Shown: positions 368 to 55,892 of the stretch, piece by piece
Layout of the letters: the number at the start of each line of letters is the position of its first letter
How positions within the stretch are numbered: the stretch's first letter is position 1
NCBI RefSeq assembly: GCF_052425735.1
Contig: NC_135761.1
Location: 20,274,001-20,338,000 of the forward strand
DNA length: 64,000 nucleotides
Source: Oculina patagonica
Lineage: Eukaryota
Direction of reading: 5' to 3'
Translations under genes and position numbers: made by a program
The notes under the pieces: model-generated
What the model was told of the DNA's origin: nothing
The model's database searches: none
The model's input: only the letters and a program-made list of their open reading frames with translations

Positions 368-3300
368 CTGGACCCCCTCCTGGCCAAAGACATCATAGAA
401 TAAGCTATTATCCAACATCATGGTGTGATTTGCCAGCTGACTTTGAATGTTATCAAGGTTCTGTGAAATGTATTCCACTTGATCACCAATATAGTTCCTA
501 AAATGGTAAAAAAAAAACATGATAAGGGAAGGACAGATTGACTGCATCTGAACAGTTAAAAACAATTTGTAACCCTTAACCATTGGCGTAGCCAGCTTTT
601 TTAAGGGTTGTAGGCATGGCCAATGGCTTTTAAGGGGTCACTGGGGAAGGTTTTAAAATCAAAACAATTTTTTCTTGTTCATAAATAAACACATGTTTTG
701 TTAACAGCTCATGCCATTGTGTGTTTGCTTGTCACCTGACTAAACGAGATAGCTCCACAGTTTGCACTTGCTAGATGAGCTTTGATCTAATCGGGAAAGG
801 GGAGTTGTGCGATATGTAATACTAAGAAATGTTAAACATTGCGTTTTATTTCATCTTAAAAGTGCACCAGCTAATTGTTAATAATATTATCAACCAACAG
901 TACCTTTAAGTACTGGTGTATTAAAATATGTGATGATGCATGAAGGTAAGTTTTAAGTACACGACTGTACCTCGCTGAACTGATTATCTTCCTGAAAAAG
1001 CCTCAGCCTTAAACAGACGATTTCTAAATTGCCTAAAACAAAGAATTACCAAAATGCCTGACAAAAATAATAGCTGAAGATACTGCATTTAAAACACCCC
1101 TAGTCATTTTCTCAATCTAAAAAAGTCTCCAAATCATTACCATGGAATTCCTGATTTCTTAAAGCTCTAAGGGAAACCAAAATCGGTTTAAGAAAGTCGG
1201 TAGTTAGTCTATGTCAATTTAAGTGGCCCATACCGCCAGAGCTTATCCCAGTTTCTGTAGAATTAAAGGAACTGTGTCACGGCAAATGGCCATTAAATTC
1301 GGTGAAATATAAAAATAACCGCTTAAAACAATGAAGAAACATTTCAATAACACAGCAAATACAAAAGAAGGCACCAATGGCAAAAAGCGAAGAAGATGGA
1401 AACTGATTGTGTGGGTTTTTTAAAAAAATTGTTGGGCTGAACAGTTTTTAAAGTTAATCTTGTTTGCTTGTAACTTTAAATTATAACGCCTGGGCGACAC
1501 ATTTGGTTGTATTAAAGCTATGGTTGTCTTGTTTAGATAAATAGAAGTAATTTATTTGGAAACATTAAGTTTATAGCAAGTATTTGGCAAAACATAATAA
1601 AATAAACTTAACTCAGTTGTGACACAGTCCCTTTACGTGACCAGGAGTATTTCTACTCCACCCTGGATGGGTTTTCTAGTTGAAACTAAATTTCGGTGTT
1701 TGCCCGAGTAAAGCAAATTCAGGGAAACAACTTTTGGGTTGATCTACAATTACCGGTAAGTGGCAGGAGGTTCAAGATGTTGAGGGTTCTGGACTTCAAG
1801 AAATCAGGACTCCACTATATATGAAAAAAAAATTATGTTTCCGACTGTCTACCTTCAATGCCACTTTTTGAATCATTTATCATCGCAACCTTGTAATGGT
1901 TATGATAAATAATTACAATGGTTCCTGTGACATTACCTTCCTAATATATCATCCTGGTTAGGGTCTTTCTCTAAGGTATCAGGGTTTAATCTGATAGGAC
2001 AGAAAATGTGATGAGTAAGTTGATGAAGTCACATGGCACAGTGCGTACATGTACTGTCACTTGCATATAAATGTAACGCATGCTGCGGAAACATGATTTA
2101 ATAGAGTATTAAACAGGGCATGATTGGTCATTAAACATTTAAAGTTTGGCAGACCACAACAGCAACTTTCACGCCAAAAGTTCAACACATTCGGGGTCTT
2201 GAAATTGCCAAAAGATTGAGTATATCTAGAGACTTCTTTTGAAAAATTGATCCTGATCTGTGTCGATATGCATTTGCACGTTCACTTGAATCACTTCTGT
2301 GCTCAGTGTTATTTGAGTGTGAAAGTTTGTGTTACGGTCTGCTAAACTTCAGATGTTTGATGACCAGTCATGCCACATTTAACATCCAATTAGATCATGT
2401 TTCGGTGGCACATGTTCACGCTTAGATGCAAGCGACAGTACAATAACAAGAGGTTCACATCAAAGATAAAAGTTGATAAGAAAAGAAAGACAAAAAGAAA
2501 ATGATGTGGTATATGTAGTACCGGTATTAATAGCAATGGGTTCAGATCACATAAGTTGACACTAAGTGCTAACTATACAGTCATCTTTCCAATAATTAGT
2601 CACAATGTTTGAATTTCAACCATACTGTTCCTGAAACAACTCTTGGACAAAAATCCTAAAAGGTTTCGTCATCTTAAAAGTAATGCATCAATCAAAGATT
2701 TATCATTCCATTCTCCACAAAACTTTTTGATGTCTCTATCTCATATAAGCTGAACAATGACTCACTGCACTTCCTACAGAGCCATTGACATGAATTATTT
2801 ATCATTTCAGCAATAAAAACATACTGTAATAATAAATAACTTTCAACGGATCACACAATGACACTACCTCTCTGAGATATCTTCCTGAGACAGTCTCTGC
2901 GTCAAAGGAATATTTCTTAAATAAGGACGCTCATCGTACTGTTGAGGCTCCATGATGTGAGTCGGGTGCACAACAGACGGCTGGGTCTGCTCCTCAGGGA
3001 AAGTGACCACACCCTGCGATGGCTGTGCATGTAAAACTGAGGCTTGTGGGTAAGATGGTGCTGAGAAGAAGAACAAACACCAAAATTTCAACAAGTACAA
3101 AATGAAATGAGCAGGGAACAAACCGTTACTATCACTGATCAGAGATCGATAATGGTTCATGTAGTGCTGACATCCATTTGAGATTAAAGAGTACATGCAG
3201 CTACCTTCTTTGATCAGGGACATCACAAACACTAGTGAGAGGCAGTGAGGTGTGCAATCCACTCGGGTAAGCCTAAATAGCACTTTTCATAGCCTAAATA

Positions 3301-6300
3301 GCACTCTGGTTACCCTACTATTAGCTTAGGTAGCTTGCAGTTAGCCTTTTTATTTGGAGTAGGGACAAGCAACTCTGAAATTTCGCTTGCCCCAAGCAGT
3401 TGCATGCTTGTCTCAGTTTACTTTAACTTTTTTACGATTTTAGTTAGCAGACTAAAAAAGTTACTTGAAAAGCTACTTGTCCAGCAGGAAAATTGACTTA
3501 TCCCAGATGAGTGGATGGCACTTTTTTCAAGCCCTGATCATGATTCTAAATAACATTTTCAACAACTGTTGCACTTCAGTTTAAAGGAGCAGCAAGGGGA
3601 CACATGGCCATCCAGTTTTATTTTTTTGCCATGGGTTACACGAGAACTCATTGCACAACTGAGTTACGGGTAACAAGTTTAACTGAGAACAAGTATCCAA
3701 TGATGAAAGGGAATCACTGACTAACAATAACAAGATTACATACACACGTGCACCCTGAAAACCACTGTTGACATTGTACATAAGCTGAAATAACCACAGC
3801 CTGACTAATTGTCAGAGAGCGGTGTGGACAGGCATTCAGGTGACTGGATGCAAGGTGTTTTAATATCCAAGGGACAGCCCTTACCTGCTGATGTAGACAC
3901 AGGGCTGGAAACAATAGGCTGTGACGATGGAACTGACTCCTCTGGGAATCTAATGACTGGTCTGGCATGAGAGATAGTGTCGTCATCTAAAGCAGTTATT
4001 AGAGGTCCACTTGTGGCTGAAAAAGGCAGAAAGATTGGTTCACTTATGTGCTGTGCTAAACATACCATTAACAGCTTTACCATATAATATACAAGTTGTA
4101 TTGTTAATTAGTAGGAATCGTATATTATACACTGTATGTCCTTTCTATTTTCTGGTTTCATCAACATGATGCTTTTTATTTAAATAACCATAATTGAAAC
4201 TTGTGCAAAGCTTTCAAGAGCCAGATAAAGTCCTTTGCTACATGTATGCAGTGATGACCCTACAAAACTCTACATTTGTACATCTGTGTCAAAGAATACG
4301 TAAAACATATTTTCTGAGGATACATCAATTTGCATTTAGCTTTTGTGAATCTTTAAAAACTCACGAAACTAACCTAAATAAAACCCTTTCAAGACTAAGA
4401 GGCATTAGCAAACATGTACGTGACCCTTTAAACCAAAGGAGCCTAAAGGAATAATCATGTTGGTTTTAAACTCAATATAAATTTCAGACTACTAATAAAT
4501 AAAATAAATAAGAAATAAATAAATAAATAAACAAACAAATAAATAAATACATGTACAGGAACCATCAACAAGGCTACCACACATCTTATATCATTAACTG
4601 TAAACTTACAAGGGACACTTGACGATGGAGCATTTGATATATCGGAGATTGTCAGGGTCTGTGTGCTTGGCTGCAAAAAAACAAAACAAAATAAAAACAT
4701 CAAAAAACAAGTTCTACTTGGTACTGGGGTCTAACATTTTGAACTACCATAAAGCTTTATTGATCACCCTGGAAGGGGGAGGGGTTGTTTCTTTTTTATT
4801 TTACCAGTTTCTGATTTGTCAAAAAGTGGTGCAAGATTTTAAACCAATCACAAAGCACTGTAGTGCAAAACCAAAGCAAGCACAAATTATCTTTGAAACT
4901 CAAGTGAAAACTGCTCCAACTGCCTTGAACATCCATTTATCATGACCAGTAAGGAAACTCACTCTTTGCGCACTGTAGCTTGGTGGAGGCTGCCCACTGC
5001 TAGGACCTGACCCATCCCTGTATTCATATCGCCCACGCTTGGAAGAAGAAGAAGAAGAAGAAGATTCGTCCTCTGTACTATCTTGAAGCATCAATCTACG
5101 AATATATTGATCACAAGTCTTAATAAATTAAATATACAACTGTGCATTGCTTACAGTTCAAGGAAATGACACATTGGTTTTGGATTCCAAACTTCCAATA
5201 ACTTGAAAATGATTGGCTGAAGTTTGTCTGACATTTAATTTCAGGGCTTGAAAAAGTTATGAGACATCAAGGGAGGGGAGGTATTTTACTTTTTCTACTT
5301 AGTAACCTAGTATAAAAAACTAGTTAGAAAAAACTAACAAGTTAGAATAAAAAATTAACTGAGATCAAAAATAAACTGCAACACCTACATGACTTTTGGA
5401 GTAAAGATGAACCACAATTGTTTCATTTATGTTTGGTATATTAAATTTAAAGTGACATGATCAAATAACATGCATTCCTTTGAATCAATTCCAAAATTTG
5501 CCAAGATCATATTTTTACCCTAGTCGACTTACTGTTACGGTTACTGAAGTAGTTACTAAAACTGAAATTTGCATTATAAATAAAAAGTGAAATTCTCCCA
5601 CTAAAAACTATAAGGAATGTATGGAAACCAGAAAGGAGAATTTTCATATTGACAGTAAGGCTTTAACTCACCGTTTCCTGTTTGCCATGAGCTTATCATT
5701 TTGATAAATCAACCGCATCAGATACTGAAACAGCTGTAACATAAAATGTGACACAACAAACTTTAGATCACAAACTGCTTCTTAAAAAAAGAATTTAGTT
5801 CCTACAGGACTATTTGTTCTGACAAAGTTCAGATTTGATATTTCTTGTTCCACTAAATCCAAATGGCTGATAACAGTCAGGGCAGAATTTTCTTTCAGCT
5901 TTGCTTCGAATTATTCTTGAGTAATTCCTCCATTAATAATATTCACCTTGTTGACAATCTGCTGTTGTCTTTGATGTTTTTGTCGCAGCTCTACCAGTTC
6001 ATTCCACAATGTTACATTTTCCCTGAAAAGGAGAGCATCATCATCAGCACAACATGTACCGGTAAGTCTAAATTGATAGCTCTTATCTTATCCCCTTCGC
6101 TCCAATGTAGCATAGGGCATCTACAGTTCTCGACCTGGAGTTCCACTTCATTCCATCCTGACCCTACCTGCTGCAGTTCTTGTAGTCAAAACTGTGCCCT
6201 TAGAATAACTGCAGGGTGCCCAATCTTGGGTGCCCAGCTCCTAAAAGCTTTCAGGATAGAAAACTTATTCAAACTGCCCAAAGGCAAAAGTAAGATGCCT

Positions 6301-9211
6301 GTGGCACCCGGGATCTGCTAGAGCATAGCTCTGGTTTTTGCTTATTTGCTTGCTTATTTTTAATTAATAGGAATCTAATAATGTTATTTTGGGTGTGTTT
6401 ACTTATTGCAAATGTCTAAGCATATATTGTCACAAAGTTTTAAAGTACCGGTAGGTGGTTTTTTTGTTGAAGTAGGTGACTAATTTTACAATTTTTCTAG
6501 AGAACCACAAGAACAGCCCAACAGGTACACTGGATCAGCAGGCACAGAACACAGTAAATGGTCAACAGCTTGATGTTTACCTCTTAATCTGGTCGAGCTT
6601 CATGGTCATATCATCCTGTCTTCCCTTCATGTCTTGTACATCATTTAACACTTTAGACACATCTTCATTTTTCATCTTCTTCTCTTCTGGTGTAGCCTAA
6701 CCAAAAACAACCAAATAAAAAATATTAAATAAATACACACTGTACAAAACAGCTTGTTAGACAGGGTTGCCACTCATTAGAACCCAAAAAATTCCCTGAC
6801 TTTTCACTGACCTTGCATTAGACAAATTGTCAAATAAGCAAAATAATTATTTCAAATTTCCCAAGCGATGAAAATCGTGTTCGACCGACCACACCACTCT
6901 CCACCACAGAGGTGATTTTGAACTATTCTTCCATTATGTTCCATGAGAAATGTCCCTTGTTTCCCTTGAATTAAAATATTATGAAATAAAAAAAAGGGCT
7001 ATAAATACTTATTCTGGTGTTTCAATAAAAACAATAATTATTTTTTATCACAACCTTTTTGTAATTTGAGCTCAACTTGAAAATGTAAGCCCTAAATAAT
7101 TTTTCAAGCTTGTTCTTATTCAAATCTTTTTTCCTCATCATTGCTAGTCAAACTCACTTACAGATTGTTGCCATTTTTCAAGTTCTTTTCTTCAAAATTA
7201 CAGCACAGTTTCAGTGAGTTTCCTATGACTTAGAGTGCAAGTATGTTTAAATGTTCTTTAAGCCAAGCTAAAAATAACTAACTTAACATGGTCCCTGGCC
7301 TTTAAAGGAAGCACAAACCTTTCTTTTGACATTCTCCAGCAATTCAGGATGATACTTGTTGAAATTTCCATTAAAAAACTCCCATTCATCTTTCTCTGAC
7401 CTCAGCCCTCCCTGTTCAGCACCGATCACTTTACGGAAGCCATCTGAACATGTTTAAAAAGAACAATACAGCTTTTAGATGCGGTCTGGAGTGATTTTAA
7501 TACAATCACACAGCTTGCAGAACTTATTAACCTTTGTATAACGAGCAGAAAAAATTCATTTCTAACTAAATCATCACTCTCTTTAATTAATAAATTCCTG
7601 TTAACAATGTACATACATACACATGCATTTCCAGCAGTTTAACTTAGTTCAGAGATAAACAACTTGTTGCTCCAGTTACTGGGATACTATTATTGTATTA
7701 TAAGTTTTTATCGATAGCAATATTATAAATAAATATTTCAATTTTGTCTGAAATAAAAAATGTGCCCATGCAGAACCCACTATATCTAAATGTCGTTTCG
7801 CTTGACCTGACAAGCGTCAATGCATCCCACTGAGTTTAATTTGTTGAACTAATAGTGAAATTGACACTTAGGTCATTCAGTTTTGTTTGCTTGTTGTTGT
7901 GAGCATGCTAGTAATATTACTTTGACTAATGTATTCATTGACGGCCAGACATTAACATTCTGGAAGATGATTTTTTTTATTTGTTATAAGCATGATTAAA
8001 ATCCACTTTATAACTTGTCAGCCGGTATACAAAATCCTTGCAACTTGAATGACCACCAGAGGGAATTAATATTTGAAACTAGCGAATTCAAATGTTCACA
8101 TGGCAACTGTGAAGTACACTGATGCAAGAGAGAGTACAGAAGAGACAATTTCAGTAGTAGTTTTATTTTACGTATCATTTTTTGTTATCATTATAGTAGA
8201 AGTGCCAATGCTTCAATCCAATATAGCTGAAAATATTTTTGCAACAGCTCCCCTCCCCCCACCCACACACTGACTAACAGGGACAGCATCAGATTTGCTC
8301 ATGTAGCAATATGCACATGTCTTGATCAATTTCAACTTACAACTGATGGTATCTCTACTGAAATTTACATTGTTATTTCAAATAATTATTTTACTGATGC
8401 AGATGATATTTACACAATCGACGACCAAACTCTGCTCGCAACTACAGTGCAAGTACGTCCACAAAACAATTCATCGAACTCCATTAGTAGACAAAAATTA
8501 TCGACCGGAAAAGCATACGTTTACTTCGCCCACTGCATTCCCGGTTCAAAAGACTGTAGTCCGTTGAAAACAAAATCCCGCATTGCACAAATTCTTTGGC
8601 AAAAAATAATAGCTCAAATTCTTTATAACAAAATCAAATACTTGTTTGATGTTCTCCTCAAAATATTGAAGTGAAATTGATATGAAATCGATTAATGCAT
8701 GCAGCTGTGCGTAAAGAAGCGGATGCTAAACGAATATACTCATGTACCTACACAGGAAAATATCGCAAACCCACAATCCCACCGGCTTATTTTAACAATA
8801 TACTTACACATATTCAGCTGACGAACAAAGCTTGCAAAGTTGTTGTGTTTGAAATACTTGGGAAGGATTTCGCGTGCAAACGTGGCTTGATCGTGAACCA
8901 AGAACCCGCTTCCATTCTATACAGGAAAAAAAATCGAAACGTTGCAATCATTGCTGTTAAAGCTGTTGATGACACGGAAAAGTAATAAAATTATACTCGT
9001 AGTAAATACAGAGGTAAGAGCTACGTGGTTTACAAGTGTAAAAATTCCTTGGGAGCCCATAAAAATGAAAACAGCACGGTTTTGACACCTTGTTCCATGA
9101 AATGTGCTCCTCATATTGTGGATCTTCGACCAGTTTCCACAGTTTCACTAGAAAAGCAGGGACGTTAGAAGGAATTCCGCTCGAATCTCCGTCTCCCGTC
9201 TTCATCGGCAT
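368..9211 (-). CDS. HSF1: Heat shock transcription factor (HSF1-like); 12 coding exons visible, 3' end lies beyond the left edge
   Basis: In-phase GT-AG exons: 9211-9089, 8916-8808, 7443-7319, 6696-6581, 6022-5947, 5733-5672, 5095-4963, 4670-4610, 4016-3885, 3060-2868, 1990-1937, 497-368. HSF DNA-binding domain ([15 protein letters not shown]...[25 protein letters not shown]...LLENVKRK), HR-A/B trimerisation coil ([41 protein letters not shown]), S/P-rich regulatory region, HR-C-like segment ([19 protein letters not shown]). The short low-complexity exons are less certain. Confidence 0.95.
1267..1632. mobile_element. Non-autonomous DNA transposon (Kolobok-like MITE) inserted in a SINE, in an HSF intron
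   Basis: TIR AGG(A/G)ACTGTGTCAC...GTGACACAGTCCCT with TTAA/TTAC flanks; SINE sequence continues on both sides (about 1225-1264 and 1636-1672). Confidence 0.7.
5042..5064 (-). repeat. Coding (TCT)n microsatellite encoding poly-Ser in HSF exon 7
   Basis: (GAA)7 on the plus strand; translates as [14 protein letters not shown]. Confidence 0.85.
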
Positions 9212-9335
9212 TCTTTTCACAGATCGCCCCCAAACAAAATAGCTTTCTCGCTGGTATGCGTGCAGATAAAAGATGCGTAAGTTATCCAGGCGGTTCACAC
9301 ATCGGCCATGTTTTTCCGTCCCCCCGCGCGCAGGC

Positions 9336-9342
9336 TTTTATA
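9336..9342 (-). promoter_or_regulatory. TATA box of the HSF gene
   Basis: TATAAAA on the minus strand about 125 bp upstream of the ATG, in a GC-rich promoter-like patch. Confidence 0.6.
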
Positions 9343-9410
9343 TCCCTTGAGACGTCGAGCGCGTCGGGGTCTGGGTCCGGGTCCGTAGGGCGTCGCTGAC
9401 CTTCGAAATA

Positions 9411-9418
9411 GTAAACAA
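9411..9418. promoter_or_regulatory. FOXO/forkhead site (GTAAACAA, DAF-16 binding element)
   Basis: Exact GTAAACAA/TTGTTTAC about 70 bp upstream of the TATA box. Confidence 0.4.
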
Positions 9419-9563
9419 GTTTTACTCGACACTGCGGTAGACGTGAATTGTTTATTGATTTTCTATATTTAGCATATTGAAATTTTTGGCTCAATGCCGC
9501 CTAGAGGTGTTTTTAGACTAAGGCTCTCAAGTCGTCAGGTGGCGACCTAGGCGGGAGCCTCAC

Positions 9564-9594
9564 TGACGTCATTGGGGCCGGTTGCCATGAGAAC
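9564..9594. promoter_or_regulatory. CRE palindrome, CCAAT box and RFX X-box cluster
   Basis: TGACGTCA at 9564-9571, ATTGG at 9571-9575, GTTGCCATGAGAAC at 9581-9594. Confidence 0.5.
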
Positions 9595-9621
9595 AAGGGG
9601 ACAAAATAATCAAACGTACGG

Positions 9622-9680
9622 GTTCGAGAACGTTCTCCATGGTCCTCGGCCCACGTATCACTATTTGAATGTTCCAGAAA
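9622..9680. promoter_or_regulatory. Heat shock element pair 1
   Basis: gTTCgaGAAcgTTCt (9622-9636) and tGAAtgTTCcaGAAa (9666-9680); both are perfect 3-unit inverted nGAAn arrays. Confidence 0.85.
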
Positions 9681-10274
9681 TCGTATCTGAATCTGCATAA
9701 ATTGATGAAGAATTCAGCGGGTTTTCTGGAGATTTGAGGCTAGTAAAACAATTTTATTTTCCAGAAAAAAAGGGGGAAAAGTCGCAATTTGACTCGAAAG
9801 TATAGATTTAAAATTAAAGTAATTAGTACAACTCCGTAAACCTTTTTTCTTGATTATTTTCTTATCTGGTCTTGATCAAAATCAAGATTTGTTTTCAAGA
9901 GTTCTACCAGACTATTTATTCTAGAGTTAGGGTGTTTACTTTACTAAATTCAATGAAAAGTTATTTAAAAAAAGATCCTTGCTGTTTTGGGGTTAATTTT
10001 ATATTTGTTCAAGTTTTTTTAGCATGTATTTGATATAAAATGAATCAGTTTAAGGGGAGATTTTGGAGTTTTACTAAACCTCAAAGATTAAAAGTTAAAA
10101 GTTTGTAAACATTTTCTAGTTCTATCATCGAAAACGCCTTATTCGATAAAATCAAACACTACTTCAAAACTATATTTCTATCACCGATAATATGCAAATA
10201 TTCGTTCGCTCTTACCGGAAGTGAAATAAACACCACTATATAATTGCTTACTTTGGAAGTCACGCAAACGAACC

Positions 10275-10334
10275 CTTCTGGAACGTTCGCCGCTGCCTTT
10301 GACGCGTGTTGTCGATATCAGAACATTCTAGAAC
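10275..10334. promoter_or_regulatory. Heat shock element pair 2
   Basis: cTTCtgGAAcgTTCg (10275-10289) and aGAAcaTTCtaGAAc (10320-10334); ETS-type CCGGAAGTG at 10215-10223 nearby. Confidence 0.85.
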
Positions 10335-10789
10335 TTTTATGACGCTCGAATCGCCCGGAATCTACGTCATACCATTAATACGGATCAGCATGTTGTAGTA
10401 AGTGCAGTTTAATAGATAGCTGGGTTTTTTGTTATACCAAAAAGCATTTTATACGCTTTTGGTATAAAAACAAAGCGGTGAAAAAAATGTTGTGTGCTAC
10501 GAACCAAAACACACTTGGAAACGGACTTGCAAAGTTTCCTTTCTCTAAGTTTATATTTCCCTTTTAATAACGGTATACGCATTTAAGATAAATAAAAGAA
10601 TGAATAGTTTCATCCAGATCGTGAATTAAACGAAGGAATCAAACATTTTGTCTCAAACGTTTCAGTGAGATCTGGCGACAGTTTATACCGCAAAGTCGAG
10701 AAGATCCACTATTACAAGTCGTCAATTTCAATACAGACCTGAACGTATGGAAAATAATGAAAACCATTTTCTCAGAAAATGTGTAAAAA

Positions 10790-13700
10790 CTGGTCAGTTC
10801 ACTCTAAAATTTTTCAACTGTGGATGTAACAAAATTCATATCTTAAAGAAAATTGAATGTTTCTGACATAGCATTTCTATGAAACAGTATTTCACGCCAA
10901 GTTTTCAAAATGGCGGACAGGAAGAAGGAAACAACAAAATAAACTGGACCAGTAAACATTTTACGTCCGTAAAATTCGAGAAATGTTACGCAATTGAGTT
11001 TTTATTATATTAGTCATAGTCTATTTTTCAGCCTTTGAAAATAAATCAGTGATGATACGGTTCAAAAATGCGGCAGGCTGATTGAATCTTCTGCTAGAAG
11101 ATTCTGTTTTGTTGTCATCTCTAGGCAGGGCACGTCTTTCTTGCTAGACGAAAAGCGTCACAACAAGGACATCGCCCGACGCTTTAGCTGCAGTCTTGAA
11201 TTTTTTGGGAAGATCTAAGAGTTCTTTTGCATGTAAACCATGCAGTATTTCTCGATTACACGTGTCGAAAAACGAGCGGTAGTGAATAATTCTCTTCCCC
11301 GTTGTGGAATTGTTTGTGGGTGTAAAATCAAACCAAAGGCCAGAGGGATGCGGAGTCCTGCACACATTGAAATCGGAGTAAGTGGAATGTTTAAATCGCG
11401 TGTTTATTTGTGTTTGTGCTAAAATCGTGTCGCTTGATTTGTCATCATCTGGCGAGGTACACGCAATAGTTGCTATTTCGAGGGGTAAGACACGCAACTG
11501 GGATTTTAATTTTGTAATCTCAACAAGGTGTCGTATTGTTAGAGGGATTAAGTCTGATTTGTTACGTATACGTTGCGTTTGAAGATCTATTCTGAGAAGC
11601 CAAACAGCCAACTTTATCAGATTAGTTCCGGGTAGAAAATATTTATATTTGGAGATCTGTTAGAAATTCATTGCATAGCCCAGTTGGTTATTTATCCACC
11701 GTTTTGCAATAAATTTTTGTGAGCACCGCACACTAGTTCACCGTCCAAAATCACCGTAATACAAATGCTTAGTAATATCACTCAAATAAATTCAATCTTT
11801 TGTATATAGGACCTATTATCAGCGAAATTATTTTCAGTGAAACTGTATCATTCTAGTCCCTATACTTATGTTTATATATTGTTTACTTTTGAATGTGATT
11901 TAAGGCAAGAAGACCACTATTTTGACTTGATGGTCGATCAGGATCGGACTAAAGGTAAAGCCAGCCTTTTTCTGATATTCCTTGCTACGCTGTAAATGTC
12001 ATAGCAATATACTGAGCATTGAAAAGCTAATGGTGATGTTTTTGAGTCAGCTAATACACCATTGATGATAACCATACACCTGTCTATAAGTGAGAACTAC
12101 CTGAACTTTGTAAATAAGTTGATAATCGATATTTTTAGGGTGACTGACTCGCCTATATGCAAACGCAAACCGTTTTTTACCGTTGACTCCTTTCAGAGAG
12201 ACTCCTAGCCATAAGAACACGAATAAGTGCAGGGAGAAGTTTGATTTTGTAGGGCTTATATTGTTATAGGCATCGATCGCTTATATATAATTACTCGCTA
12301 TGCTGGTTATAGGCCTTTCTCAGTTTCCCTCTAAACTGTACGATTCTGTTTTCATCCACGTTAGTCAGGCATATATCTTCTTAGTCTCATCTTTTGTCCT
12401 CGTTTTTGACTGCCTCTACTATACGGGTTTTTTCCTTCTCTTGACTCCAGCTTCGTGAAGAGTATTGTCTTCCATGTCTGCATGTCTAAACATTCTTGCT
12501 ATTTGACAGGTGTGCCTATTTCGCCATTCCACGAACAAAATTCATAATATCTTTAACTCACGGTTTTTTTTGCTTGTCTTGTTTGGAATCTTTTCTTTAT
12601 TTGATTCATTACTATTTGGAGGCTTGCTAACTTTTTTTAAACAATAAATTTTGTAGTGGTGCAAATGATAAATGTTGTTTACGTACAGCCAGAATTTTTT
12701 CACTGAATCTATTCACCATGCATTTCTGGTGCCTGCCTTCGGTTAAAAACATTCTCTTTTAGTGTCGATTCAGTTGCGGTGATTTCATCGGTTCAGTAAA
12801 ACTTCTGTTTGACATACAATTTGAACAACGTTTTACTGAAAGCGTCTTGAAGCGTCTATTTGTCGTAGATTCTATTTCTTTAAACCCCTCTGATTCAAGC
12901 GGAGCGGGTGATACGTGTGCAGTCACCGGCCGATTGCACGCGCTTTCAGGGTGTGCGGTAGTTGAATTTTCCAGCTTGCCCGAAGGGCAAGCTGTTGCCA
13001 GGATATACCAGACCTAAAGTCAGTTTTTTCAAGCCAAAAAATTCTCATAAGCACGATGCTCATGATGCTTCACTTGCCCGACCTCAAAATCCACTAGCCC
13101 CAAGCTAGCGAACACTAACTTCTTTGCACGCAGTCCGATTCAAGATTCTTATTTTTTCAACTCTGCCTTAAATCGACTCCTTATGCTTAAACGACTCCCT
13201 CCCTCTTTGAGGAATCTTGTGGAGAGCTCTCGCTACAGTACAATAATGTTTATTTCTCTTGTCTTGTCAGGGTGTGCCTAATTATGAATTCCGTTCCGGC
13301 CTATGTTCACTGACTCCGCTCGGCAAGCGAGCAATTTCGTTCCCCGCGCACGCCAGTTTTAAAATTTTTAGCCGTTTATGTGTGCATGCCGCTCTGTCCA
13401 GGAGTATCCGAAAAACCCGGAGAAGTGAGCCCTAAAATGGAAAAAACCCTGATGAACTAGTTCTGTTTTGGCTATTGTAAAATCTAGACCATAAGACGAT
13501 TTCCGAAGGTGCTCGTAAAAATACTGATACAGTACGCCACATTGGTTCAAATACTGAGCTCCGACATTTGTTTGCAGTTGAAACAGTTCACACTGAGAAT
13601 ATTACGCATTTTGACTGTGAGACAGTGATATATTCCTTTACATCCGACTGCAAGCTATTTGTGGGTACACCAATTACATGACTATATAAATGAGTATTTT

Positions 13701-14756
13701 AACAATTCAGTTTGTATTTTCTCTCTTTCAGTGCCAACCATGTAGCAACAACTTCCACGATTCTACCCACCACAGGAAACAGGATTTCTAGCTTGTGGAA
13801 CAACATGCATTTGTTCCGGGGAAGCTTTCAGTAAACGAATGGTAAACCGTTGTTGAATTATTGATTCGCTGGATAGCACGGTAACTGAGGACGGTTTTAG
13901 ATGCCAGTACAACATTTCAAACAAAATTAAAAGATTTTCCCATAATCAAATAATCAATTTTTCAAGAATGAAGACCATTCTCTCCTGTTCTTGTTGATTG
14001 TTACTTAACGTTCACAACCATCTGTAAGCATAACTAACCGCAATTCCAGCGTTTTGCTCTGCCTGTCAATACTGATAATTTTTATCTGAACGGTTACACG
14101 CTAACATAGTTGACTATTCGTTGTTGTTTATTTTATTTTTATTCCGTCAGCCATTTTGAAAACTTGCATTTAACAGAAAACTTTCATGGGAATCCTATGT
14201 CTAATATACTTTTCTGCAAAATACGAATTTTGTCACATCTACAGTGGCAAAATTTAAAAGTGAACTGATCAGATTTAAGGGTTGCACGTTTTAAAAGAAA
14301 GTGTAATTACGAAAACAACTGGACTAGCTAGTAAACATTTTACGTCAGTAAAATTTGAGAAATGTTACGGTAATATAAATTTTATTAGTCATACTCTATT
14401 TTACAACCTTTGGAAAAAACAGTGACGATACGGCTCAAAAATGCAGCAGGTTGATTACTGCTGCTAGAAAATTCTGGGCACGTCTACCTCGCTTGATGGA
14501 AAGCGTCACAACATTGCCACCGCCCGACGCTTTCGCTACTAAGTCTTGAATTTTCTTTTGACAATCTTTAAGTTCTTTTGTATGGATAAGAGGTAGCACA
14601 TAATTTTTCAGTTACTTGTGTCGTAAAACGTGCGGTGAATAATTCTCTTCTCCGTAGAAAAATCTGGCTGTGGGTATAAAATCACTGCCAAAAGGACACA
14701 ATGAATGCGTGAGGGATGCGGGGTCCTGCACACATTGTTTTTATCGCGTGTTTATC
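10790..14756. repeat. Local diverged duplication: block B direct (about 10942-11410 and 14317-14756), block A inverted (about 10790-10918 and 14147-14272)
   Basis: Shared AGTAAACATTTTACGTC...GAGAAATGTTACG...CGCCCGACGCTTT...GAGGGATGCGG.GTCCTGCACACATTG in both B copies; CAAGTTTTCAAAATGGC is matched by GCCATTTTGAAAACTTG on the opposite strand. Confidence 0.75.
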
Positions 14757-17250: not shown

Positions 17251-20200
17251 ATGGCGACTGAAACTCTTCGATCTGTATCTAAAAGGCTTGGAATTACGGC
17301 AGTGGATGCTTTAAAGAAAGCTGCTGAGCTTGAGCGCTTGATGGATGTGCGCGGTTGTTCTCTGACTTTATCTAGCGTGGCTAAATCTGTGATTTGTCTT
17401 GAGATTGCTGCGAGTAGTTCACAAGTCCAGGTCGACAAGGTAAGCGGTGAACATACGTACTAGGAGAAATCAGCCTAAAGTGATACTTAATTGCTATGAT
17501 TACATCGGCCTTATCGAATTTAAAGTATGTCTGTGATCCAATGATTTCTAAAGAAGCGTAAACCTTTTTATAATTAGCCCACTAAATCCAAATTTGGCAA
17601 GAGCGGCCTGTCAAAACATTGGTAAGGTATAAAAGTCTGGGCCCAGTGGCCCATCAGGCCGGAGCTTATCCCGGTTTCTGTAGCATTAAGCAACTAGGGG
17701 TATTCTACTCCTCCCAGGATGGGATGCTAGTTTATAGAGGATTACCATGACCTCCAGCATTATTTAACATAAATGTGCTGGAACCCATTTATACACCAGG
17801 GTGAAGAGAGGCACTACTGGAGAGAGAGAGAGAGTGAAGTGTCATGCCTATTAAAGAACACAATGTAGTAGCCTAGTCCAGTCCCTGAACTCTCTCTTCC
17901 GTGCGCCCTTTATAGGGGTTGAACCCAGGCATGCAAAGAGAGAGTCCAGGATAACTTGCCTGCGCATGCTCAGAACGAACCAATCAGAAGCGACAAGTGT
18001 GGCGTCACTTGCTTGGGACGGGCGCCCTCGGTTAAAAATGCTCGCTCAAATGACGAAATCAACTACGCGACCGAGCGCGCGAATAAATGCAAGAAAAAAA
18101 ACTGTGCTCAATTGCATCCAAATATAATTCAATAAACAGCTACAAAACTAGGAGTAGTTGACGGATAGCGATTTGTGTTTTGGCCGATAGCTTTTAGTAG
18201 ACACTGACTGGAAAGCTAGGCTTTTTAAAGTTATTCCGGTGATCCAGCTTTAGTACACGGTCGCGTAGTTGAACTCGTCATTTGTGCGCGCGCGTTTTCA
18301 AAAGTGCTGCCAAATATGGTTTTTCCCCCAATTTTGGGGGAAAAACTGGCGCATGCGCATGCAAGTTATCCTGGACTCTCTCTTCGCGCGCCTGGGCTCA
18401 GCCCCTATGTAGGGCGCGCGGAAGAGAGAGTTCAGGGACTGCACTATGTAGTAGCCTTAAGCAGAAGCCTGACTCAGGCTTGAACCCAGACCACTCGATC
18501 TGGAGTCCAGTGTGCTAACCATCGGACCACTGTGCCTCCGGCCCTATTCTGTCAAAACATGGTTGCCATGAATGATGGATAAAAAATAAAATGAGACATT
18601 AAAACTGTCAACCTATTTTTTATCCTGGACATAAACTATAAGCATAAGCAATAAGCAAATATCTTGAGAATACATTGTGTTGTTCCAGAAAATATCCATA
18701 TCCCTCCCAACGAAGGTTTTTGGTTTGAATCCCCCCTTGGAAATTCTAGTTAAGCCCCATACCTTCCTTAAAAAATTTTGGCTTTTGAGACCCCTTACCC
18801 CCTTATTTCCACTGACCTTCCATGGGGTGGGTATGGACATTTCCTGGAAGTGTATATTAAATGATCATATAGTTGCAGTTTGCAGTGTTTCATACTTTTA
18901 TGCATAATTTTTTATTCCTCTACGATTCTTCTTTATTTGTGTTTTCAATAGAAAATACATAATATTATACTTCACCATTTCCCTCTCTTTATAGACTACG
19001 GCAATTCGTCTTTCTGGAATGACGAAGAAAACATACATTCATGCTTTCAAAACAATAGAGTGTCTGTTGGGAAAGCAAAAGGAATTTACCATCAAAGATC
19101 TTGCTGTGCAGTTTGGTTGCATGGAAGCTTCAAACCTGGCTCAGCAAATTCATCAGAGGTGCAAATGTCTAACTGCATTAAATGTTATTTTTGATTTTTT
19201 ATTAATCTTAAACTAAACCCACCCGGAAAACTTGCCAGAATGTAACCCACAAGTAATACAATGAAAAATTTATGACCCCTCTTTTAAAAAAAATCCCTGA
19301 AATATCACCAAATATTACTTCTTAACCCAAATTGAAAATATATTGTGACTTATTATATTATATCATTATATGCATTACAACTCCACCGCGCTTTAAATGT
19401 GTACCTCAAATTTTGAGGTTATTAAGCATTCATATATTCAAGCTATTGTTTAAACTCATTGCCTATTCATTCCGATGTATTTGCCGACAAGCCGGCAAGC
19501 TTCCAAAGATCGCGAAGAGCGCAACATCTTTGATGTAGGTGAGAAGTATATCTTTTGTTCACAGACTGAAAAATATCTCCTGGGAATCTGCTCGACTGAT
19601 TTTATTTTCTATCACTTTCAATGCTAGGAAATGTAATTCATTTACTTAAAAACTGCAGAAGTTTTACGTAAATTACGTGCGCAGTAAGGATGCGCATAAA
19701 CAATTAGCGCGAACGTCCTTAAGCGAAGATTATATTTATTAAGCTTAACAATTGTCGGCGAAGAATATTAAAACTTGGCGCGCGTGCAGCACGGTTTCAC
19801 ATTACAAGGCTAGGAAAATTGAACGCTTAATTTAGTTTCCTGTGTTCACAAAACTATAAATCAATGTTTAACGCGCATTTTTGTGCGGAAAAATAAAAAA
19901 TCAAATCAAATCCATTGTTTGTTTTTTATTCTGCGGGATACATACTTCATAGACGGCACGGGATAGACGAAAACGCTAAACTTTAAAAAACAAAGTGATC
20001 ACTCAGCTTAGATAGACTATAGAGAACTGTCCTTGATTAAAATCTCTTTTATGTGCACTAAAAACGCTTCGAATAAAATACCAACAACAGAAGGAAGCGC
20101 TTAACTCTATAAAAAGCGATTTTGGAGCTATCTGGGCATAATTAACTTTGTAAATCGAGCCCGCCGCTACGCGCTCAGCGAAAACAAAACTAAAATCGCC

Positions 20201-25160: not shown

Positions 25161-28148
25161 TCATAGCATGTTTGCCTTAATCCAGTAGTACAGTTTAGCA
25201 ATGTTAGTGTACACGCCGTAATACTGCCCAGCGCAGCCCCATCCCCAGCTGGTCGTGCCCACGAGATACCAGCGGTCGTCCTTCTCACAAACAAGAGGAC
25301 CTGGTAGAGATAAAAAAGAGCATGTTGTTGCAAGTTACTGTAGTACTGGCCTCGTAATCGCCTGCGCCAACCCTGCCGCGTGTTCGTCGAGATAGGCGGC
25401 TACAATTGCAAGCTAAAACGAAACAAGGAAGCGGCAACGACTACGGGGAAAAGATGACCACGCCCTCGTGAGCTCCTCCTCCTCTTGAACGCTGCATAGT
25501 ATCGATAAAATTTTCTCTTGATATGCGAGGAAGACAAAAAGGGGCTTAGCTACCGTATACTTGTTACACTGTTCGACTAGGTACATCAGCTTAAGCTGGG
25601 TTGATAAGTAATTCTCGGCTCAGTCATTTATCAGCTCAAATAATTTTCGAAACTGCAAAGTGAGCTGCAGTGTGCACTAAAAATTGAGCTGCAGTTTTCC
25701 TAAATGTACGCTCGCGCTCCCCTTTCTTGAGCTACTTTTGTGAATGTCTGTTCAGGATGGTGCAAGTCAAACGTGTATAACTTCGCAACAACATATTTAA
25801 GAGTTTTGTTGCTTTACCTTTCCTGACACTTCTGCAATTTTCCTAACATATTATATAGTGTGTTTGAGTTAACGTTTGACAACGATAGCAATCGGCTCTT
25901 TAAGAACCAAAACCTTTCCCAAGAAATCTCAGTTGAAGTCTGTGGATTAAATCTTAGTGTGAGCAGTACTTTTATGTGATGTTGTTTTTAAAACTTCACA
26001 AAAAGTTTTTTTTTCAATTTTGAATGTTGGTGCTCTTGCAAGTGAAAGAGTTTTATCCAATAAGAGAACAGTTTATTTATGATATATTTGAGAGCATCAC
26101 TTTTACCTCCACTATCCCCCTGACAGGCGTCAATTCCTCCTCCTGAGAACCCAGCACAGATCATATTGGATGTTATGAGCTCAGGTCTGTAGTTCTGCTT
26201 GCAGTTCTCGTCCGAGATTATGGGGACACTTGCCTCTCTTAAAACAGGAGATGTACTGCCACCTTGACGGGTGCGACCCCACCCTGTGATGTAGCATGGT
26301 GTCCCTGTGCAAGTCGAACCATACAATGACATTAATGAACCGAAGACGTTTCGCCAAACAGCATACCTTAAAGTTTTCATGCCATATTTGAATTTCCAGT
26401 ATAGTGTGAGCTTAATTATGAAAAGAGAGTGACTTCATTTTTAAACTTTAAAAAATGTAAGCACAGCCATCCTCGCCTGGATTTTTAATAAAGAATCCTC
26501 CGCCACGTTTTTTTTGGTTTGAATAGTTTTTCAACAATCAGCACTTAGGTGTGCCGGAATGAGAATTCGCACTCATCTGAAATTCATTGCCAGGCAATAA
26601 AGGTCAGCGATGATCTAGCCTTGACAAGGGTCTTTGGTTCAAGGAGCCGCCATCTTGGAATTAACCGCCAGCGGAGATCCTCGGTACGAGGTTGCTGCGA
26701 CCTTGTCCCCAGGGCGCTTTTCCCGTCAAAAGTGGAAAGGGCCACTTTCGAAGGGAAAAGTACCCTGGGGACGAAGTTGAGGCTGCTATCGCTGGTGCAA
26801 ACAGTCAAAGAGGGCGAGACATGTTGGTGAAAAAAGATAAGAGCTGAATTCTAGTTTTTGCAACCGTGCAAGCAAACTAGTCTCGGAAGGATTTTCTCAG
26901 AAGGTTTAACGACACACGTACCTGGTGGGAAATCAGCATAACTGCTTTGCAGGCACGCTGGTCCCACGCGACTATTGAATTTGGCGGGAGACGCCAGCTT
27001 GATGACAGCAATGTCACGATCATGAGTAGCCGCTACTCCGTACGAGCGATGCGTGTACGCAGCGGCAATATCAATGTCTTGCTCGTAACCTTCAGTGGTT
27101 TCAAAGTGGTGCTCACCAAGGCGAACCTGTGATAAAATAAACACATGGACAGATTGTGTTAGTACTGTATCTGAATTTCGTCCCTACCCTATATTTGGAT
27201 GCCCCACAGCTAGGTTTAACGAGTCGGTTTACAAATTCTCATTTCATAAGTCTACCAGCGCGACATGAGAATATCTGTAGTTGTTAACTCTAAAAACATC
27301 ATAGGTCCCCTTTAAGGAATAGGTTTTGTTGTCAAGAACTAAAACTTGCATGTAGTACCCTTACAGAGAGAAGGGAAAGGACCTATTTAGAGAGAGACTT
27401 GATTTTTGTGGTATGTTGCAGGCCTCAACGAGTAAGGTAATTCACGGTAAAAAAATGTATAAGCCTTGACGTGATCCAAGCAATAACAGTCTATAACAGT
27501 CACTTTAAATTCTCTCCAAAAGCAACAAAACATTCTTGCACGCTCAATGTTATTCTTTCCGGTCATGCTATCTGGAGAAGAATGGAGTACCTTTGTTGAC
27601 ATATGTTATCCTATAAATGAGAAATGGGACCTTGATGGGAAGCTGTTATGAAAATCGTGCGAAGATTGTTCGAAGAATGCTCAAACGTTTCCGATTATTT
27701 TTCCCGAAGATTACCGAGGACTTACGAGTGTTGTTGCAACCGTTCTTTTGGCAAGTCAGTTGCAGCTTGCGAGGAAGCAAAGAGTGTTGCGTGACAACCT
27801 GCAAAGAAGGATACTTCGAGAGAGAGAGGAAAGTGTAACGCAATCAGTGTCGAGACACAATACCCACCTTGTAGTCCTTGATAAAAGTGTCGATACTGGA
27901 GGGGATGCAGTGTGCAGCTGTTACCACGTGGTACGCGGAGACCAAAGTTCCTCCACAGTCTTGAGACTTACAAGTCTTACACATGATAGCAACTTGCCAA
28001 GGCCACGCCCCTGGGGTTGCGACCTTTCCTCCTACGATTTGACCGACGCTCAAACCGGCAACTGAGCGGTTGGTCACCTTCACGCCACAGGAGACCGGAG
28101 GAGGGGGAGTGGTCGTAGGGGGATCGGTCAAAGGATCCCTCGCTAGAG
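25161..28148 (-). CDS. Trypsin-like serine protease domain exons (part of the dual-protease gene)
   Basis: SCG linker, [33 protein letters not shown] (Asp at the S1 pocket position), SWGWGC, GVYT, stop TGA at 25163-25161. Confidence 0.95.
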
Positions 28149-53517: not shown

Positions 53518-54243
53518 ATGGACGTCCCTTTACACGAAGATTTCCTCAAAAAAGAAGAAGAGAAGGAAAAATGGGTTGAATACTGGGTAATTTTGAGGAA
53601 TTGTGTTTTGTATTTTTACGATGAGAAGACGGATTTGTGGCACGAGTACTGCGACAAAATCGACATCACTGCGAACTCGCGATGTGCTGTTGTGAAGCGG
53701 AAGACATACAGCCATCGATTTAAACTGGTCACCGAAGAGGGAACGTGTCTTTTGAAATGCCACACAAACCTTCAAAGACATCGCTGGATGCATGCGATCG
53801 AACTGGCGGTGAGGGAAATTTCCTCTAAAGCCACAGACCTCGCACCGGTGGCAACAACACCGCGTGGTTGTTACTACGAGCGAGATTTGTTTGGAAGAAG
53901 TATGCGAAGGGAAATGAGGCAACAAGAAGCAGCGCGCCAAAATAACAACAACACGCTTGAAGAACTAAGTTTGAATTTGGATTTGGAAAAAGAAGGCAAG
54001 CGTGAAAGACAGACTTCACGAAAGAGCTCCAAGTTACAGAAAAGCGCTCAAAGGGATAAAGACTCATCCATCGCATTCGAATCACTACAATGCGATTTTG
54101 ATCCAAATCTTGGGAGCCCGGTGGAAAATCTCGCTTTCTCCGACGATGAAGTCAGCGTAGATGGAAATATAAAGATGCGAAGCATTCGTTCGGCACCTGT
54201 AGCGAAATTTATTCGTGTTGGAAGTGCTAGTAAGCCAATATAA
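53518..54243 (+). CDS. PH-domain protein, paralog A (241 aa, intronless CDS)
   Basis: N-terminal PH fold pattern HEDFLKK...W..YWVILR..VLYFY...F.LVT...LLKC.....RWM.AIE, followed by a charged low-complexity tail; clear paralog at 57413. Confidence 0.85.
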   Translation: MDVPLHEDFLKKEEEKEKWVEYWVILRNCVLYFYDEKTDLWHEYCDKIDITANSRCAVVKRKTYSHRFKLVTEEGTCLLKCHTNLQRHRWMHAIELAVREISSKATDLAPVATTPRGCYYERDLFGRSMRREMRQQEAARQNNNNTLEELSLNLDLEKEGKRERQTSRKSSKLQKSAQRDKDSSIAFESLQCDFDPNLGSPVENLAFSDDEVSVDGNIKMRSIRSAPVAKFIRVGSASKPI

Positions 54244-55649: not shown

Positions 55650-55892
55650 CAATTGGCTCATAGCTCACGGCGCTTGAAAAATTCTGTAGCGTGAATCAGC
55701 TAGGAGTATTGTTACTCCCGCTGAATGGGATGCTAGTCCATCAAAGGGTACTCCCCAGCATTCTATCAGGTTTACCCAATAATTCGCCAGTACCCCTTGG
55801 TTAATAGAGAGATATTGTGAGGGTAAAGTGTTTTGTCCAAGAACACAACACAATGACTCCGGCCAGGGCTTGAACCCCGCTGCGTCTCCCAC
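55650..55892 (-). mobile_element. tRNA-derived SINE copy
   Basis: Same family as 61165-61463 (GGGATGCTAGTCCATC, CAAGAACACAAC, CCAGGGCTTGAACCC). Confidence 0.7.

What the first reader, a model, noticed from the sequence alone, without database searches (positions are those of the whole stretch)
9622..10334. Four perfect heat shock elements upstream of the HSF gene itself: candidate autoregulation
Seen: four perfect 3-unit HSEs within about 710 bp, 0.4-1.1 kb upstream of the HSF ATG. A rough estimate from base composition (about 63% AT assumed) gives about one such site per 80 kb by chance, and I noticed only one other in the window (41757). Established: HSF trimers bind nGAAnnTTCnnGAAn, and vertebrate HSF1 is regulated mainly after translation. 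Inference: this HSF induces its own transcription, a feedback loop relevant to thermal tolerance if the host is a coral.
Basis: partly seen in the sequence, partly recalled or inferred. Interest (0 to 1): 0.8.

Follow-up and report, generated by a model that had tools for sequence, protein, structure and literature searches.

The report
Conserved heat-shock elements upstream of coral HSF1
A stony-coral heat-shock factor gene carries four perfect binding sites for its own protein in two upstream modules that six coral genera share, so it probably boosts its own transcription under heat; this kind of loop is already known from other organisms.

Summary
Four perfect 3-unit HSEs lie at 9623-9635, 9667-9679, 10276-10288 and 10321-10333. 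About 1.2 are expected in the whole 64-kb window, and P for four in 711 bp is about 1e-9. The HSF gene is on the minus strand. It is a scleractinian HSF1 orthologue with its ATG at 9211, a TATA box at 9342-9335 and cDNA 5' ends at 9314/9317. The HSEs form two symmetric pairs, each TTC-type then GAA-type with a 44-45 bp offset, at -306/-365 and -959/-1019 from that start.

Both modules lie in conserved islands separated by unconserved sequence. All four sites have orthologous counterparts in Pocillopora, Stylophora, Porites and Acropora; Orbicella has the two proximal ones, and an assembly gap hides its distal region. The GAA/TTC cores are conserved while the N positions vary (p=0.002). Papers report heat-induced HSF1 mRNA in Acropora millepora and Nematostella.

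Positive autoregulation is therefore the best reading (about 0.65), but neither occupancy nor heat induction was tested in this species.

One complication: the proximal pair lies only 47-103 bp from a divergent plus-strand noncoding transcript start at 9726, so the promoter may be bidirectional.

This is a new member of a known kind, of moderate interest.

The parts
10321..10333 (.). HSE site 1, outer site of the distal module, perfect 3 units (GAAcaTTCtaGAA on +)
   Evidence: The orthologous site is perfect in Pocillopora, Stylophora and Porites and has one mismatch in Acropora digitifera.
10276..10288 (.). HSE site 2, inner site of the distal module, perfect 3 units
   Evidence: It is a perfect 4-unit array in Pocillopora and Stylophora and has one mismatch in Porites and in Acropora.
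9667..9679 (.). HSE site 3, outer site of the proximal module, perfect 3 units
   Evidence: It is perfect only in this species. Orbicella has 1 mismatch and the other four species have 2, with the form nTCnnGAAnnnTC kept.
9623..9635 (.). HSE site 4, inner site of the proximal module and the best-conserved site
   Evidence: It is perfect in Orbicella, Pocillopora, Porites and Acropora, with the N positions differing, and has one mismatch in Stylophora.
10302..10308 (.). ACGCGTG core centred between the two distal HSEs
   Evidence: The block CAACACGCGT is conserved in window, Pocillopora and Stylophora and nearly so in Porites. Assigning a binding factor is inference.
9652..9656 (-). ACGTG core between the two proximal HSEs
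   Evidence: ACGTGGGCC is conserved in the four robust corals and is ACGTGCG in Porites.
10192..10245 (.). Conserved tail of the distal module: octamer-like ATGCAAAT, ETS-like ACCGGAAGTG (10214-10223) and a TATATAA-like stretch (about 10237-10244)
   Evidence: CACTTCCGG is invariant in the five species with sequence there. The factor names are motif resemblance only.
9564..9575 (-). CCAAT box overlapping a perfect CRE (TGACGTCA)
   Evidence: TGACGTCA is invariant in all six species.
9397..9472 (-). Further conserved promoter blocks: CTAAATATAG (9472-9463), TGTTTAC (9417-9411) and AGGTCA (9402-9397)
9335..9342 (-). TATA box (TATAAAAG) of HSF1
   Evidence: The TATA core is invariant in all six species. 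It lies 25-28 bp upstream of the mapped 5' ends.
9314..9317 (-). HSF1 transcription start
   Evidence: Template-switch-oligo sequence abuts contig ends at 9314 and 9317 in run X1. Contigs in X4 and X8 end at 9328 and 9345. A Porites transcript contig begins at the equivalent place.
9089..9313 (-). HSF1 exon 1: 5' UTR with a conserved mini-uORF (9309-9295) and coding sequence from the ATG at 9211
   Evidence: The splice joint 8916/9089 is seen in four runs. Translation is and the uORF.
8808..8916 (-). HSF1 exon 2 (DNA-binding domain)
   Evidence: Pfam HSF_DNA-bind, E 1e-11. It is 100% identical to the Nematostella and Pocillopora proteins over this exon.
374..7443 (-). Remaining HSF1 coding exons; the C-terminus probably lies beyond the window start
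   Evidence: tblastn of coral HSF1 proteins; exon 3 junction.
9695..9704 (+). TATA-like GCATAAATTG for the divergent transcript
   Evidence: It lies 22-31 bp upstream of the plus-strand 5' end at 9726. AAATTTATGC is conserved in five of six species, not in Porites.
9726..11377 (+). Divergent low-abundance noncoding transcript, apparently a long first exon that runs through the distal module to a GT donor at 11377
   Evidence: A template-switch-oligo-tagged 5' end lies at 9726, with X1 contigs at 9726-10614, 10668-10995 and 11192-11377 and joints 11377/11905 and 11952/13730. There is no ORF over 60 aa and no Rfam family. The region is present in contigs of at least 11 RNA-labelled runs.

Best explanation
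The four sites are functional HSF-binding sites. They are organised as two ancient cis-regulatory modules in the 5' flank of the coral HSF1 gene. Each module is a symmetric pair: a TTC-first trimer site, a 31-32 bp spacer with a central (A/G)CGTG core, then a GAA-first trimer site. On heat stress, pre-existing HSF1 trimerises, occupies these modules and raises transcription from the TATA-box promoter of its own gene (start 9314-9317). This is a positive feedback loop that amplifies the heat-shock response. The proximal module probably also fires a divergent noncoding transcript from 9726, which would make the promoter bidirectional. Shown here: the sites, their statistics, the gene model and start sites, and the conservation with its core-sparing substitution pattern. 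Taken from papers: heat induction of HSF1 mRNA in related cnidarians. Inferred: occupancy by HSF1, direction of the effect, and heat induction in this species.
For: Enrichment: there are four perfect HSEs in 711 bp against 1.2 expected per 64 kb. Gene and starts: the gene is the HSF1 orthologue, with a TATA box and 5' ends tagged by template-switch oligo. Perfect HSEs in relatives: they recur at matching distances from the ATG in Pocillopora (-1061, -1016, -421), Stylophora (-1082, -1037), Porites (-942, -403), Orbicella (-407) and Acropora digitifera (-385). Outside these promoters only 3 perfect HSEs occur in 158 kb. Conservation pattern: alignments place all four sites in register in two conserved islands (55-86% and 58-74% identity to the window), separated by a 38-51% middle. 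Core columns vary in 6 of 36 cases and N columns in 10 of 16 (Fisher p=0.0024). No rival target: no protein-coding gene is on record within 6 kb upstream in Pocillopora, Stylophora, Porites or A. digitifera. Orbicella has only a partial HSF copy there. Papers: HSF1 mRNA rises at 1.5-3 h of heat in A. millepora and HSF1 is needed for heat survival. HSF1 is upregulated at 38 C in Nematostella. Expression range: HSF1 contig depth differs about 100-fold per million letters between runs. This is weak evidence, consistent with a strongly regulated gene.
Against: There is no HSF occupancy data and no heat time course for this species, and the conditions of the runs are hidden. The sites lie 306-1019 bp from the HSF1 start, further than the classical -50 to -100 position. 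The proximal pair is much nearer (47-103 bp) to the divergent start at 9726. Site 3 is degenerate in every other species. In Galaxea fascicularis HSF1 is reported not to be heat-induced, and its promoter could not be fetched. Conservation beyond Scleractinia (anemones, octocorals) could not be tested because the look-ups failed.
Confidence: 0.65

Rival explanations
1. The HSE modules are bound by HSF1 but mainly drive the divergent plus-strand noncoding RNA (start 9726), or act as a heat-responsive enhancer producing eRNA. HSF1 mRNA itself would not be appreciably raised through them.
For: A template-switch-oligo-tagged plus-strand 5' end lies at 9726. It is 47-59 bp from site 3 and has a TATA-like motif at about -30, which is the classical heat-shock promoter geometry. 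That TATA-like motif is conserved in five of six species. The upstream region is present in contigs of at least 11 RNA-labelled runs. The modules are symmetric and so independent of orientation.
Against: The transcript is rare, with depth 60 against 3708 for HSF1 in the same run. Its 5' end rests on a single contig. It has no ORF and no Rfam match, and its body is not conserved. The site nearest to it (site 3) is the least conserved, while site 4 on the HSF1 side is the best conserved. HSF1 mRNA is heat-induced in relatives. The two readings are not exclusive.
Confidence: 0.15
2. The sites are conserved HSF1 targets that serve basal or developmental HSF1 expression, or feedback attenuation, rather than heat-triggered positive feedback.
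For: The promoter also carries invariant CRE, CCAAT, forkhead-like and MEF2-like blocks, which suggests multi-input control. Galaxea shows no heat induction of HSF1. HSFs have known non-stress roles.
Against: Multiple perfect trimeric HSEs are the signature of strongly heat-induced genes. In Nematostella only one typical HSE was found among nine in HSP promoters. HSF1 mRNA does rise with heat in A. millepora and Nematostella.
Confidence: 0.12
3. The cluster arose by chance, or was delivered by a repeat or transposable element, and has no function.
For: The spacers of the two pairs are about 50% identical, which hints at an old duplication of one module. A nearby segment (about 10.8-11.4 kb) is duplicated at about 14.1-14.8 kb.
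Against: P is about 1e-9. The modules are not part of any repeat family in the region. They are orthologous and conserved across six genera with core-specific constraint.
Confidence: 0.02

Closest known systems
Heat-inducible plant HSF genes with HSEs in their own promoters (HsfA2 / HsfB class; for example LpHsfA2 self-regulation, PMC11583844, abstract listed)
   Same: An HSF gene carries HSEs upstream and is itself induced by heat through HSF binding, giving feed-forward or positive feedback.
   Different: Plants have large HSF families in which a master HsfA1 induces other members. Corals have essentially one HSF1 (Orbicella has an extra partial copy), so here the loop would be true self-activation. 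The plant case rests on my own knowledge plus a listed abstract; it was not examined here.
HSE on the human HSF1 promoter (HSF1 and HIV-1 Nef co-recruitment, reviewed in PMC12366260)
   Same: An animal HSF1 gene with an HSE in its own promoter that can raise HSF1 transcription.
   Different: It is a single element described in a viral-infection context, and vertebrate HSF1 is otherwise controlled mainly after translation. The coral locus has four perfect sites in two conserved modules.
Divergent heat-shock gene pairs sharing HSEs (for example C. elegans hsp-16 pairs; from my own knowledge, not tested)
   Same: HSEs lie between two oppositely oriented TATA-containing core promoters.
   Different: Here the starts are about 410 bp apart, one partner is a rare noncoding RNA, and the other is the transcription factor gene itself.
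Predicted HSF1 sites in cnidarian heat-response promoters (A. millepora and Galaxea preprint 10.64898/2026.04.01.714264; Nematostella PMC13104882)
   Same: The same motif definition (GAAnnTTCnnGAA). More sites correlate with stronger induction, and HSF1 mRNA is itself heat-induced.
   Different: Those scans cover 500 bp upstream of every gene, and the text read here does not discuss HSF1's own promoter or use the word autoregulation. The distal module at about -1 kb would fall outside their 500-bp scan range.

Membership tests
Canonical heat shock element (trimeric HSE) | At least three contiguous inverted nGAAn units in 5-bp register | tested here: met
   Four perfect 3-unit arrays. Site 1 has a fourth unit with one mismatch.
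Canonical heat shock element (trimeric HSE) | Lies in the regulatory region of a gene, and is conserved as a binding site | tested here: met
   The sites lie at -306 to -1019 from the mapped HSF1 start. Orthologous sites occur in five other genera with core-specific conservation.
Canonical heat shock element (trimeric HSE) | Occupied by HSF in vivo on stress | not testable with these tools
   No ChIP, CUT&Tag or ATAC data were available.
Positive transcriptional autoregulation of an HSF | The factor's own binding sites lie in its own gene's control region | tested here: met
   The gene is the HSF1 orthologue, and its DNA-binding exon 2 is identical to that of other cnidarian HSF1 proteins. HSEs lie upstream.
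Positive transcriptional autoregulation of an HSF | The factor's mRNA rises on the activating signal (heat) | tested here: inconclusive
   Not testable for this species, because run conditions are hidden; HSF1 contig depth varies about 100-fold between runs. Papers report induction in A. millepora and Nematostella but not in Galaxea.
Positive transcriptional autoregulation of an HSF | Induction depends on the sites and on the factor | not testable with these tools
   Needs mutated reporters, CRISPR deletion, or measurement of HSF1 transcript in HSF1 mutants.
Bidirectional heat-shock promoter | Two divergent transcription starts flank shared HSEs | tested here: inconclusive
   5' ends tagged by template-switch oligo lie at 9314/9317 (-) and 9726 (+). 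The plus-strand end rests on one contig in one run.
Bidirectional heat-shock promoter | Both products are heat-induced genes | tested here: not met
   The plus-strand RNA has no ORF over 60 aa and no Rfam family. Its heat response is unknown.

The most novel reading that the evidence does not exclude
The dual HSE-pair architecture dates back to the common ancestor of all living stony corals. Each pair encloses an (A/G)CGTG core of the kind bound by bHLH-PAS or bZIP factors, so the HSF1 promoter would integrate heat with a second stress signal such as hypoxia. Under this reading, lineage-specific decay or perfection of the HSEs sets the gain of HSF1 self-activation. This species has four perfect sites and Acropora digitifera has one. 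That gain would contribute to species differences in the size of the early heat response and in thermal tolerance.
Probability: 0.15. Interest if true: 0.75.

Novelty: new member of a known kind. Interest (0 to 1): 0.5.

Why it matters
HSF1 is the one transcription factor shown genetically to be needed for coral larval survival under heat. The size of its early induction differs between a heat-sensitive and a heat-tolerant coral. A defined, conserved pair of cis-modules that would make HSF1 self-amplifying gives a concrete target for explaining and testing that difference. The modules are small and alignable across Robusta and Complexa. Their HSE quality varies between genera. They can be deleted or mutated in the corals that are now genetically tractable. 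If the loop is real, the number and quality of HSEs in this promoter is a candidate marker for the gain of the coral heat-shock response.

Tried and rejected
Chance: rejected on shuffles, the iid rate and the empirical background.

Repeat or transposon origin: the repeat finder shows no repeat family covering either module. The only duplication nearby is 10.8-11.4 kb against 14.1-14.8 kb.

Pair A as a recent copy of pair B: the spacers are only about 50% identical. This is inconclusive; at best it reflects a very old duplication.

A protein-coding divergent neighbour as the real target: the nearest coding gene upstream is ORC6, at 17251 and onward. No gene is on record within 6 kb upstream in four relatives.

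A heat-specific HSF1 start just downstream of site 4 (the conserved GATTATTTTG stretch): depth is zero at 9388-9584 in all four runs, so it is unsupported, though the conditions of those runs are unknown.

Pfam on exon 1 alone gave no hit because the piece is too short.

Deeper conservation: look-ups failed for Montipora, A. millepora/muricata, A. palmata, Nematostella and Paramuricea. Anemones and octocorals are therefore untested. The Orbicella distal region is an assembly gap and was left as such.

The Aiptasia paper (PNAS 2020, PMC7682557), which may already mention HSF1's own promoter, is not held.

The scan's earlier notes gave nothing relevant.

Full report
OBSERVATION. Exact searches find perfect three-unit heat shock elements at 9623-9635, 9667-9679, 10276-10288 and 10321-10333. 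Both sit inside a MAM/astacin gene region and their number fits chance. Dinucleotide shuffles give 1.2 sites per 64 kb. Coral DNA outside HSF promoters holds 3 sites in 158 kb. Four sites in a given 711 bp has P of about 1.4e-9, or about 2.5e-7 after correction for the whole window. The cluster is real and not chance.

THE GENE. The HSF gene is on the minus strand. Exon 2 (8916-8808) matches Pfam HSF_DNA-bind. Coral HSF1 proteins align to eleven exons from 9211 down to about 374, at 79-84% identity. The closest relatives are the Orbicella-containing cluster and Pocillopora. Nematostella HSF1 is 68% identical. The promoter is most similar to that of Orbicella (86%), so the window comes from a robust-clade stony coral.

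Laying contigs of four RNA-labelled runs confirmed the first intron (8917-9088, GT..AG on the minus strand). It also showed template-switch-oligo sequence abutting contig ends at 9314 and 9317. That these loose letters are the Smart-seq-type oligo, and so mark cDNA 5' ends, is my own knowledge. These ends lie 25-28 bp downstream of TATAAAAG at 9342-9335. The four HSEs therefore lie at -306/-321, -350/-365, -959/-974 and -1004/-1019 from the start, and 424-1122 bp from the ATG at 9211.

ANATOMY. The sites form two pairs with the same symmetric layout: a TTC-first trimer site, a 31-32 bp spacer, then a GAA-first trimer site. The layout reads the same on both strands, and start-to-start offsets are 44 and 45 bp. 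Each spacer has a central (A/G)CGTG core, at 9656-9652 and at 10302-10308.

CONSERVATION. I fetched the HSF1 loci of Pocillopora damicornis, Orbicella faveolata, Stylophora pistillata, Porites lutea and Acropora digitifera. Perfect HSEs recur at matching distances from the ATG:
- Pocillopora: -1061, -1016 (4 units), -421
- Stylophora: -1082, -1037 (4 units)
- Porites: -942, -403
- Orbicella: -407 (its distal region is an assembly gap, left unfilled)
- Acropora: -385

Alignments put all four sites in register. Site 4 is perfect in five species and has one mismatch in Stylophora. Sites 1 and 2 are perfect or have one mismatch in every species that has sequence there. Site 3 is perfect only in this window.

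The flank resolves into two conserved islands. The proximal island (9212-9720) is 55-86% identical to the window and the distal island (10180-10400) is 58-74% identical. Between them the identity is 38-51%. Within the sites the GAA/TTC columns vary in 6 of 36 cases and the N columns in 10 of 16 (Fisher p=0.0024). This is the pattern expected if selection acts on HSF contacts.

The proximal island also carries blocks that are invariant or nearly so: TATA, CCAAT plus a perfect CRE (TGACGTCA), TGTTTAC, CTAAATATAG and AGGTCA. The distal island carries CACTTCCGG and a TATA-like stretch. Because Porites and Acropora belong to Complexa and the others to Robusta, the architecture predates the split of living stony corals.

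THE COMPLICATION. In run X1 a plus-strand contig (9726-10614, depth 60 against 3708 for HSF1) is preceded by template-switch-oligo sequence. This marks a plus-strand 5' end at 9726. It lies 22-31 bp downstream of GCATAAATTG (9695-9704), a motif conserved in five of six species. It is only 47-59 bp from site 3 and 91-103 bp from site 4, which is classical heat-shock promoter geometry.

Further contigs (10668-10995, 11192-11377) and GT..AG joints (11377/11905, 11952/13730) suggest a spliced plus-strand RNA. It has no ORF over 60 aa and no Rfam match. The upstream region appears in contigs of at least 11 RNA-labelled runs from four studies. The interval 9388-9584 is silent in all four runs laid.

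The promoter therefore looks bidirectional, with HSF1 on one side and a rare noncoding RNA on the other. The plus-strand start rests on a single contig, so I hold it at moderate confidence. No protein-coding gene is on record within 6 kb upstream in four relatives. Here the next coding gene upstream is ORC6, at 17251 and onward.

LITERATURE. A 2026 preprint reports that HSF1 mRNA rises at 1.5 and 3 h of heat in Acropora millepora larvae but not in Galaxea fascicularis. It also reports that HSF1 mutants survive heat less well, and that genes with more predicted HSF1 sites in the 500 bp upstream are induced more. The text does not contain the word autoregulation. Nematostella HSF1 is also upregulated at 38 C, and CREB and HSF motifs are enriched in induced promoters. 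In Nematostella HSP70/HSP90 promoters only one of nine HSEs is fully canonical, so four perfect sites is a strong signal. An HSE on the human HSF1 promoter has been described, and plant HSF genes with HSEs are well known. The Aiptasia study that may already comment on HSF1's own promoter is not held.

MECHANISM AND VERDICT. The best-supported reading (about 0.65) is that the two modules are functional HSF1-binding sites giving heat-triggered positive autoregulation of HSF1. The proximal module probably also drives a divergent noncoding RNA.
- Shown: the sites, their statistics, the gene model, the starts, and the conservation with core-specific constraint.
- From papers: heat induction of HSF1 mRNA in relatives.
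- Inferred: occupancy, sign of the effect, and induction in this species.

The rivals are these. The modules may mainly serve the divergent RNA or act as an enhancer without raising HSF1 (0.15). They may serve basal or developmental control (0.12). They may be chance or repeat-derived (0.02).

The finding is a new member of a known kind: HSF genes carrying their own HSEs. It is of moderate interest because it gives a small, conserved and experimentally tractable element for the gene that governs coral heat survival.

Noticed in passing
window 9295-9309 (- strand): A mini upstream ORF (ATG GCC GAT GTG TGA) begins 5-8 nt after the mapped HSF1 start. An upstream ATG followed by a short ORF is kept at the same place in all six coral species aligned, inside a very conserved 5' UTR. 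It may control HSF1 translation.
   Followed up: partly
window 9652-9656 and 10302-10308: Each HSE pair has a conserved (A/G)CGTG core in the middle of its spacer (ACGTGGGCC proximal, ACACGCGT distal). This is the core recognised by bHLH-PAS, bHLH and bZIP factors. From memory, Drosophila Hsf is induced by HIF-1 through such elements, so the coral promoter may integrate a second stress signal.
   Followed up: partly
window 10786-11407 and 14146-14755: A segment of about 0.5 kb is duplicated about 3.35 kb downstream (73-95% identity in blocks), together with an inverted arm pair (10786-10852 / 14210-14276). A spliced plus-strand noncoding RNA (joints 11377/11905 and 11952/13730) runs across it and reaches depth 230-646 in run X2. 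The GT donor of the first copy is absent from the second copy.
   Followed up: partly
L002 251-2439 (Orbicella faveolata): A second, partial HSF gene (143 aa, HSF_DNA-bind) with an identical first coding exon lies about 3.5 kb upstream of the full HSF1 gene in the same orientation. It looks like a local duplication specific to that assembly or lineage. The interval between the two copies contains an assembly gap.
   Followed up: no
window 17251-19213 (+ strand): ORC6 (Pfam ORC6 and ORC6_2nd) is the nearest protein-coding neighbour. It is divergent from HSF1 and about 8 kb away. In the relatives an SPMIP8-family gene follows HSF1 downstream.
   Followed up: partly
window 33316-33328 and 41758-41770: The two other perfect HSEs of the window lie within a minus-strand region encoding MAM domains (37896-38237, 42612-42899, about 45436) and an astacin domain (49024-49308). 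Their number fits the chance expectation, and they were not tested for conservation.
   Followed up: no
window 25988-29327 (- strand); 53518-58129 (+ strand): The window also holds trypsin-like serine protease exons, a C-type lectin exon, and two tandem paralogous single-exon PH-domain genes.
   Followed up: no
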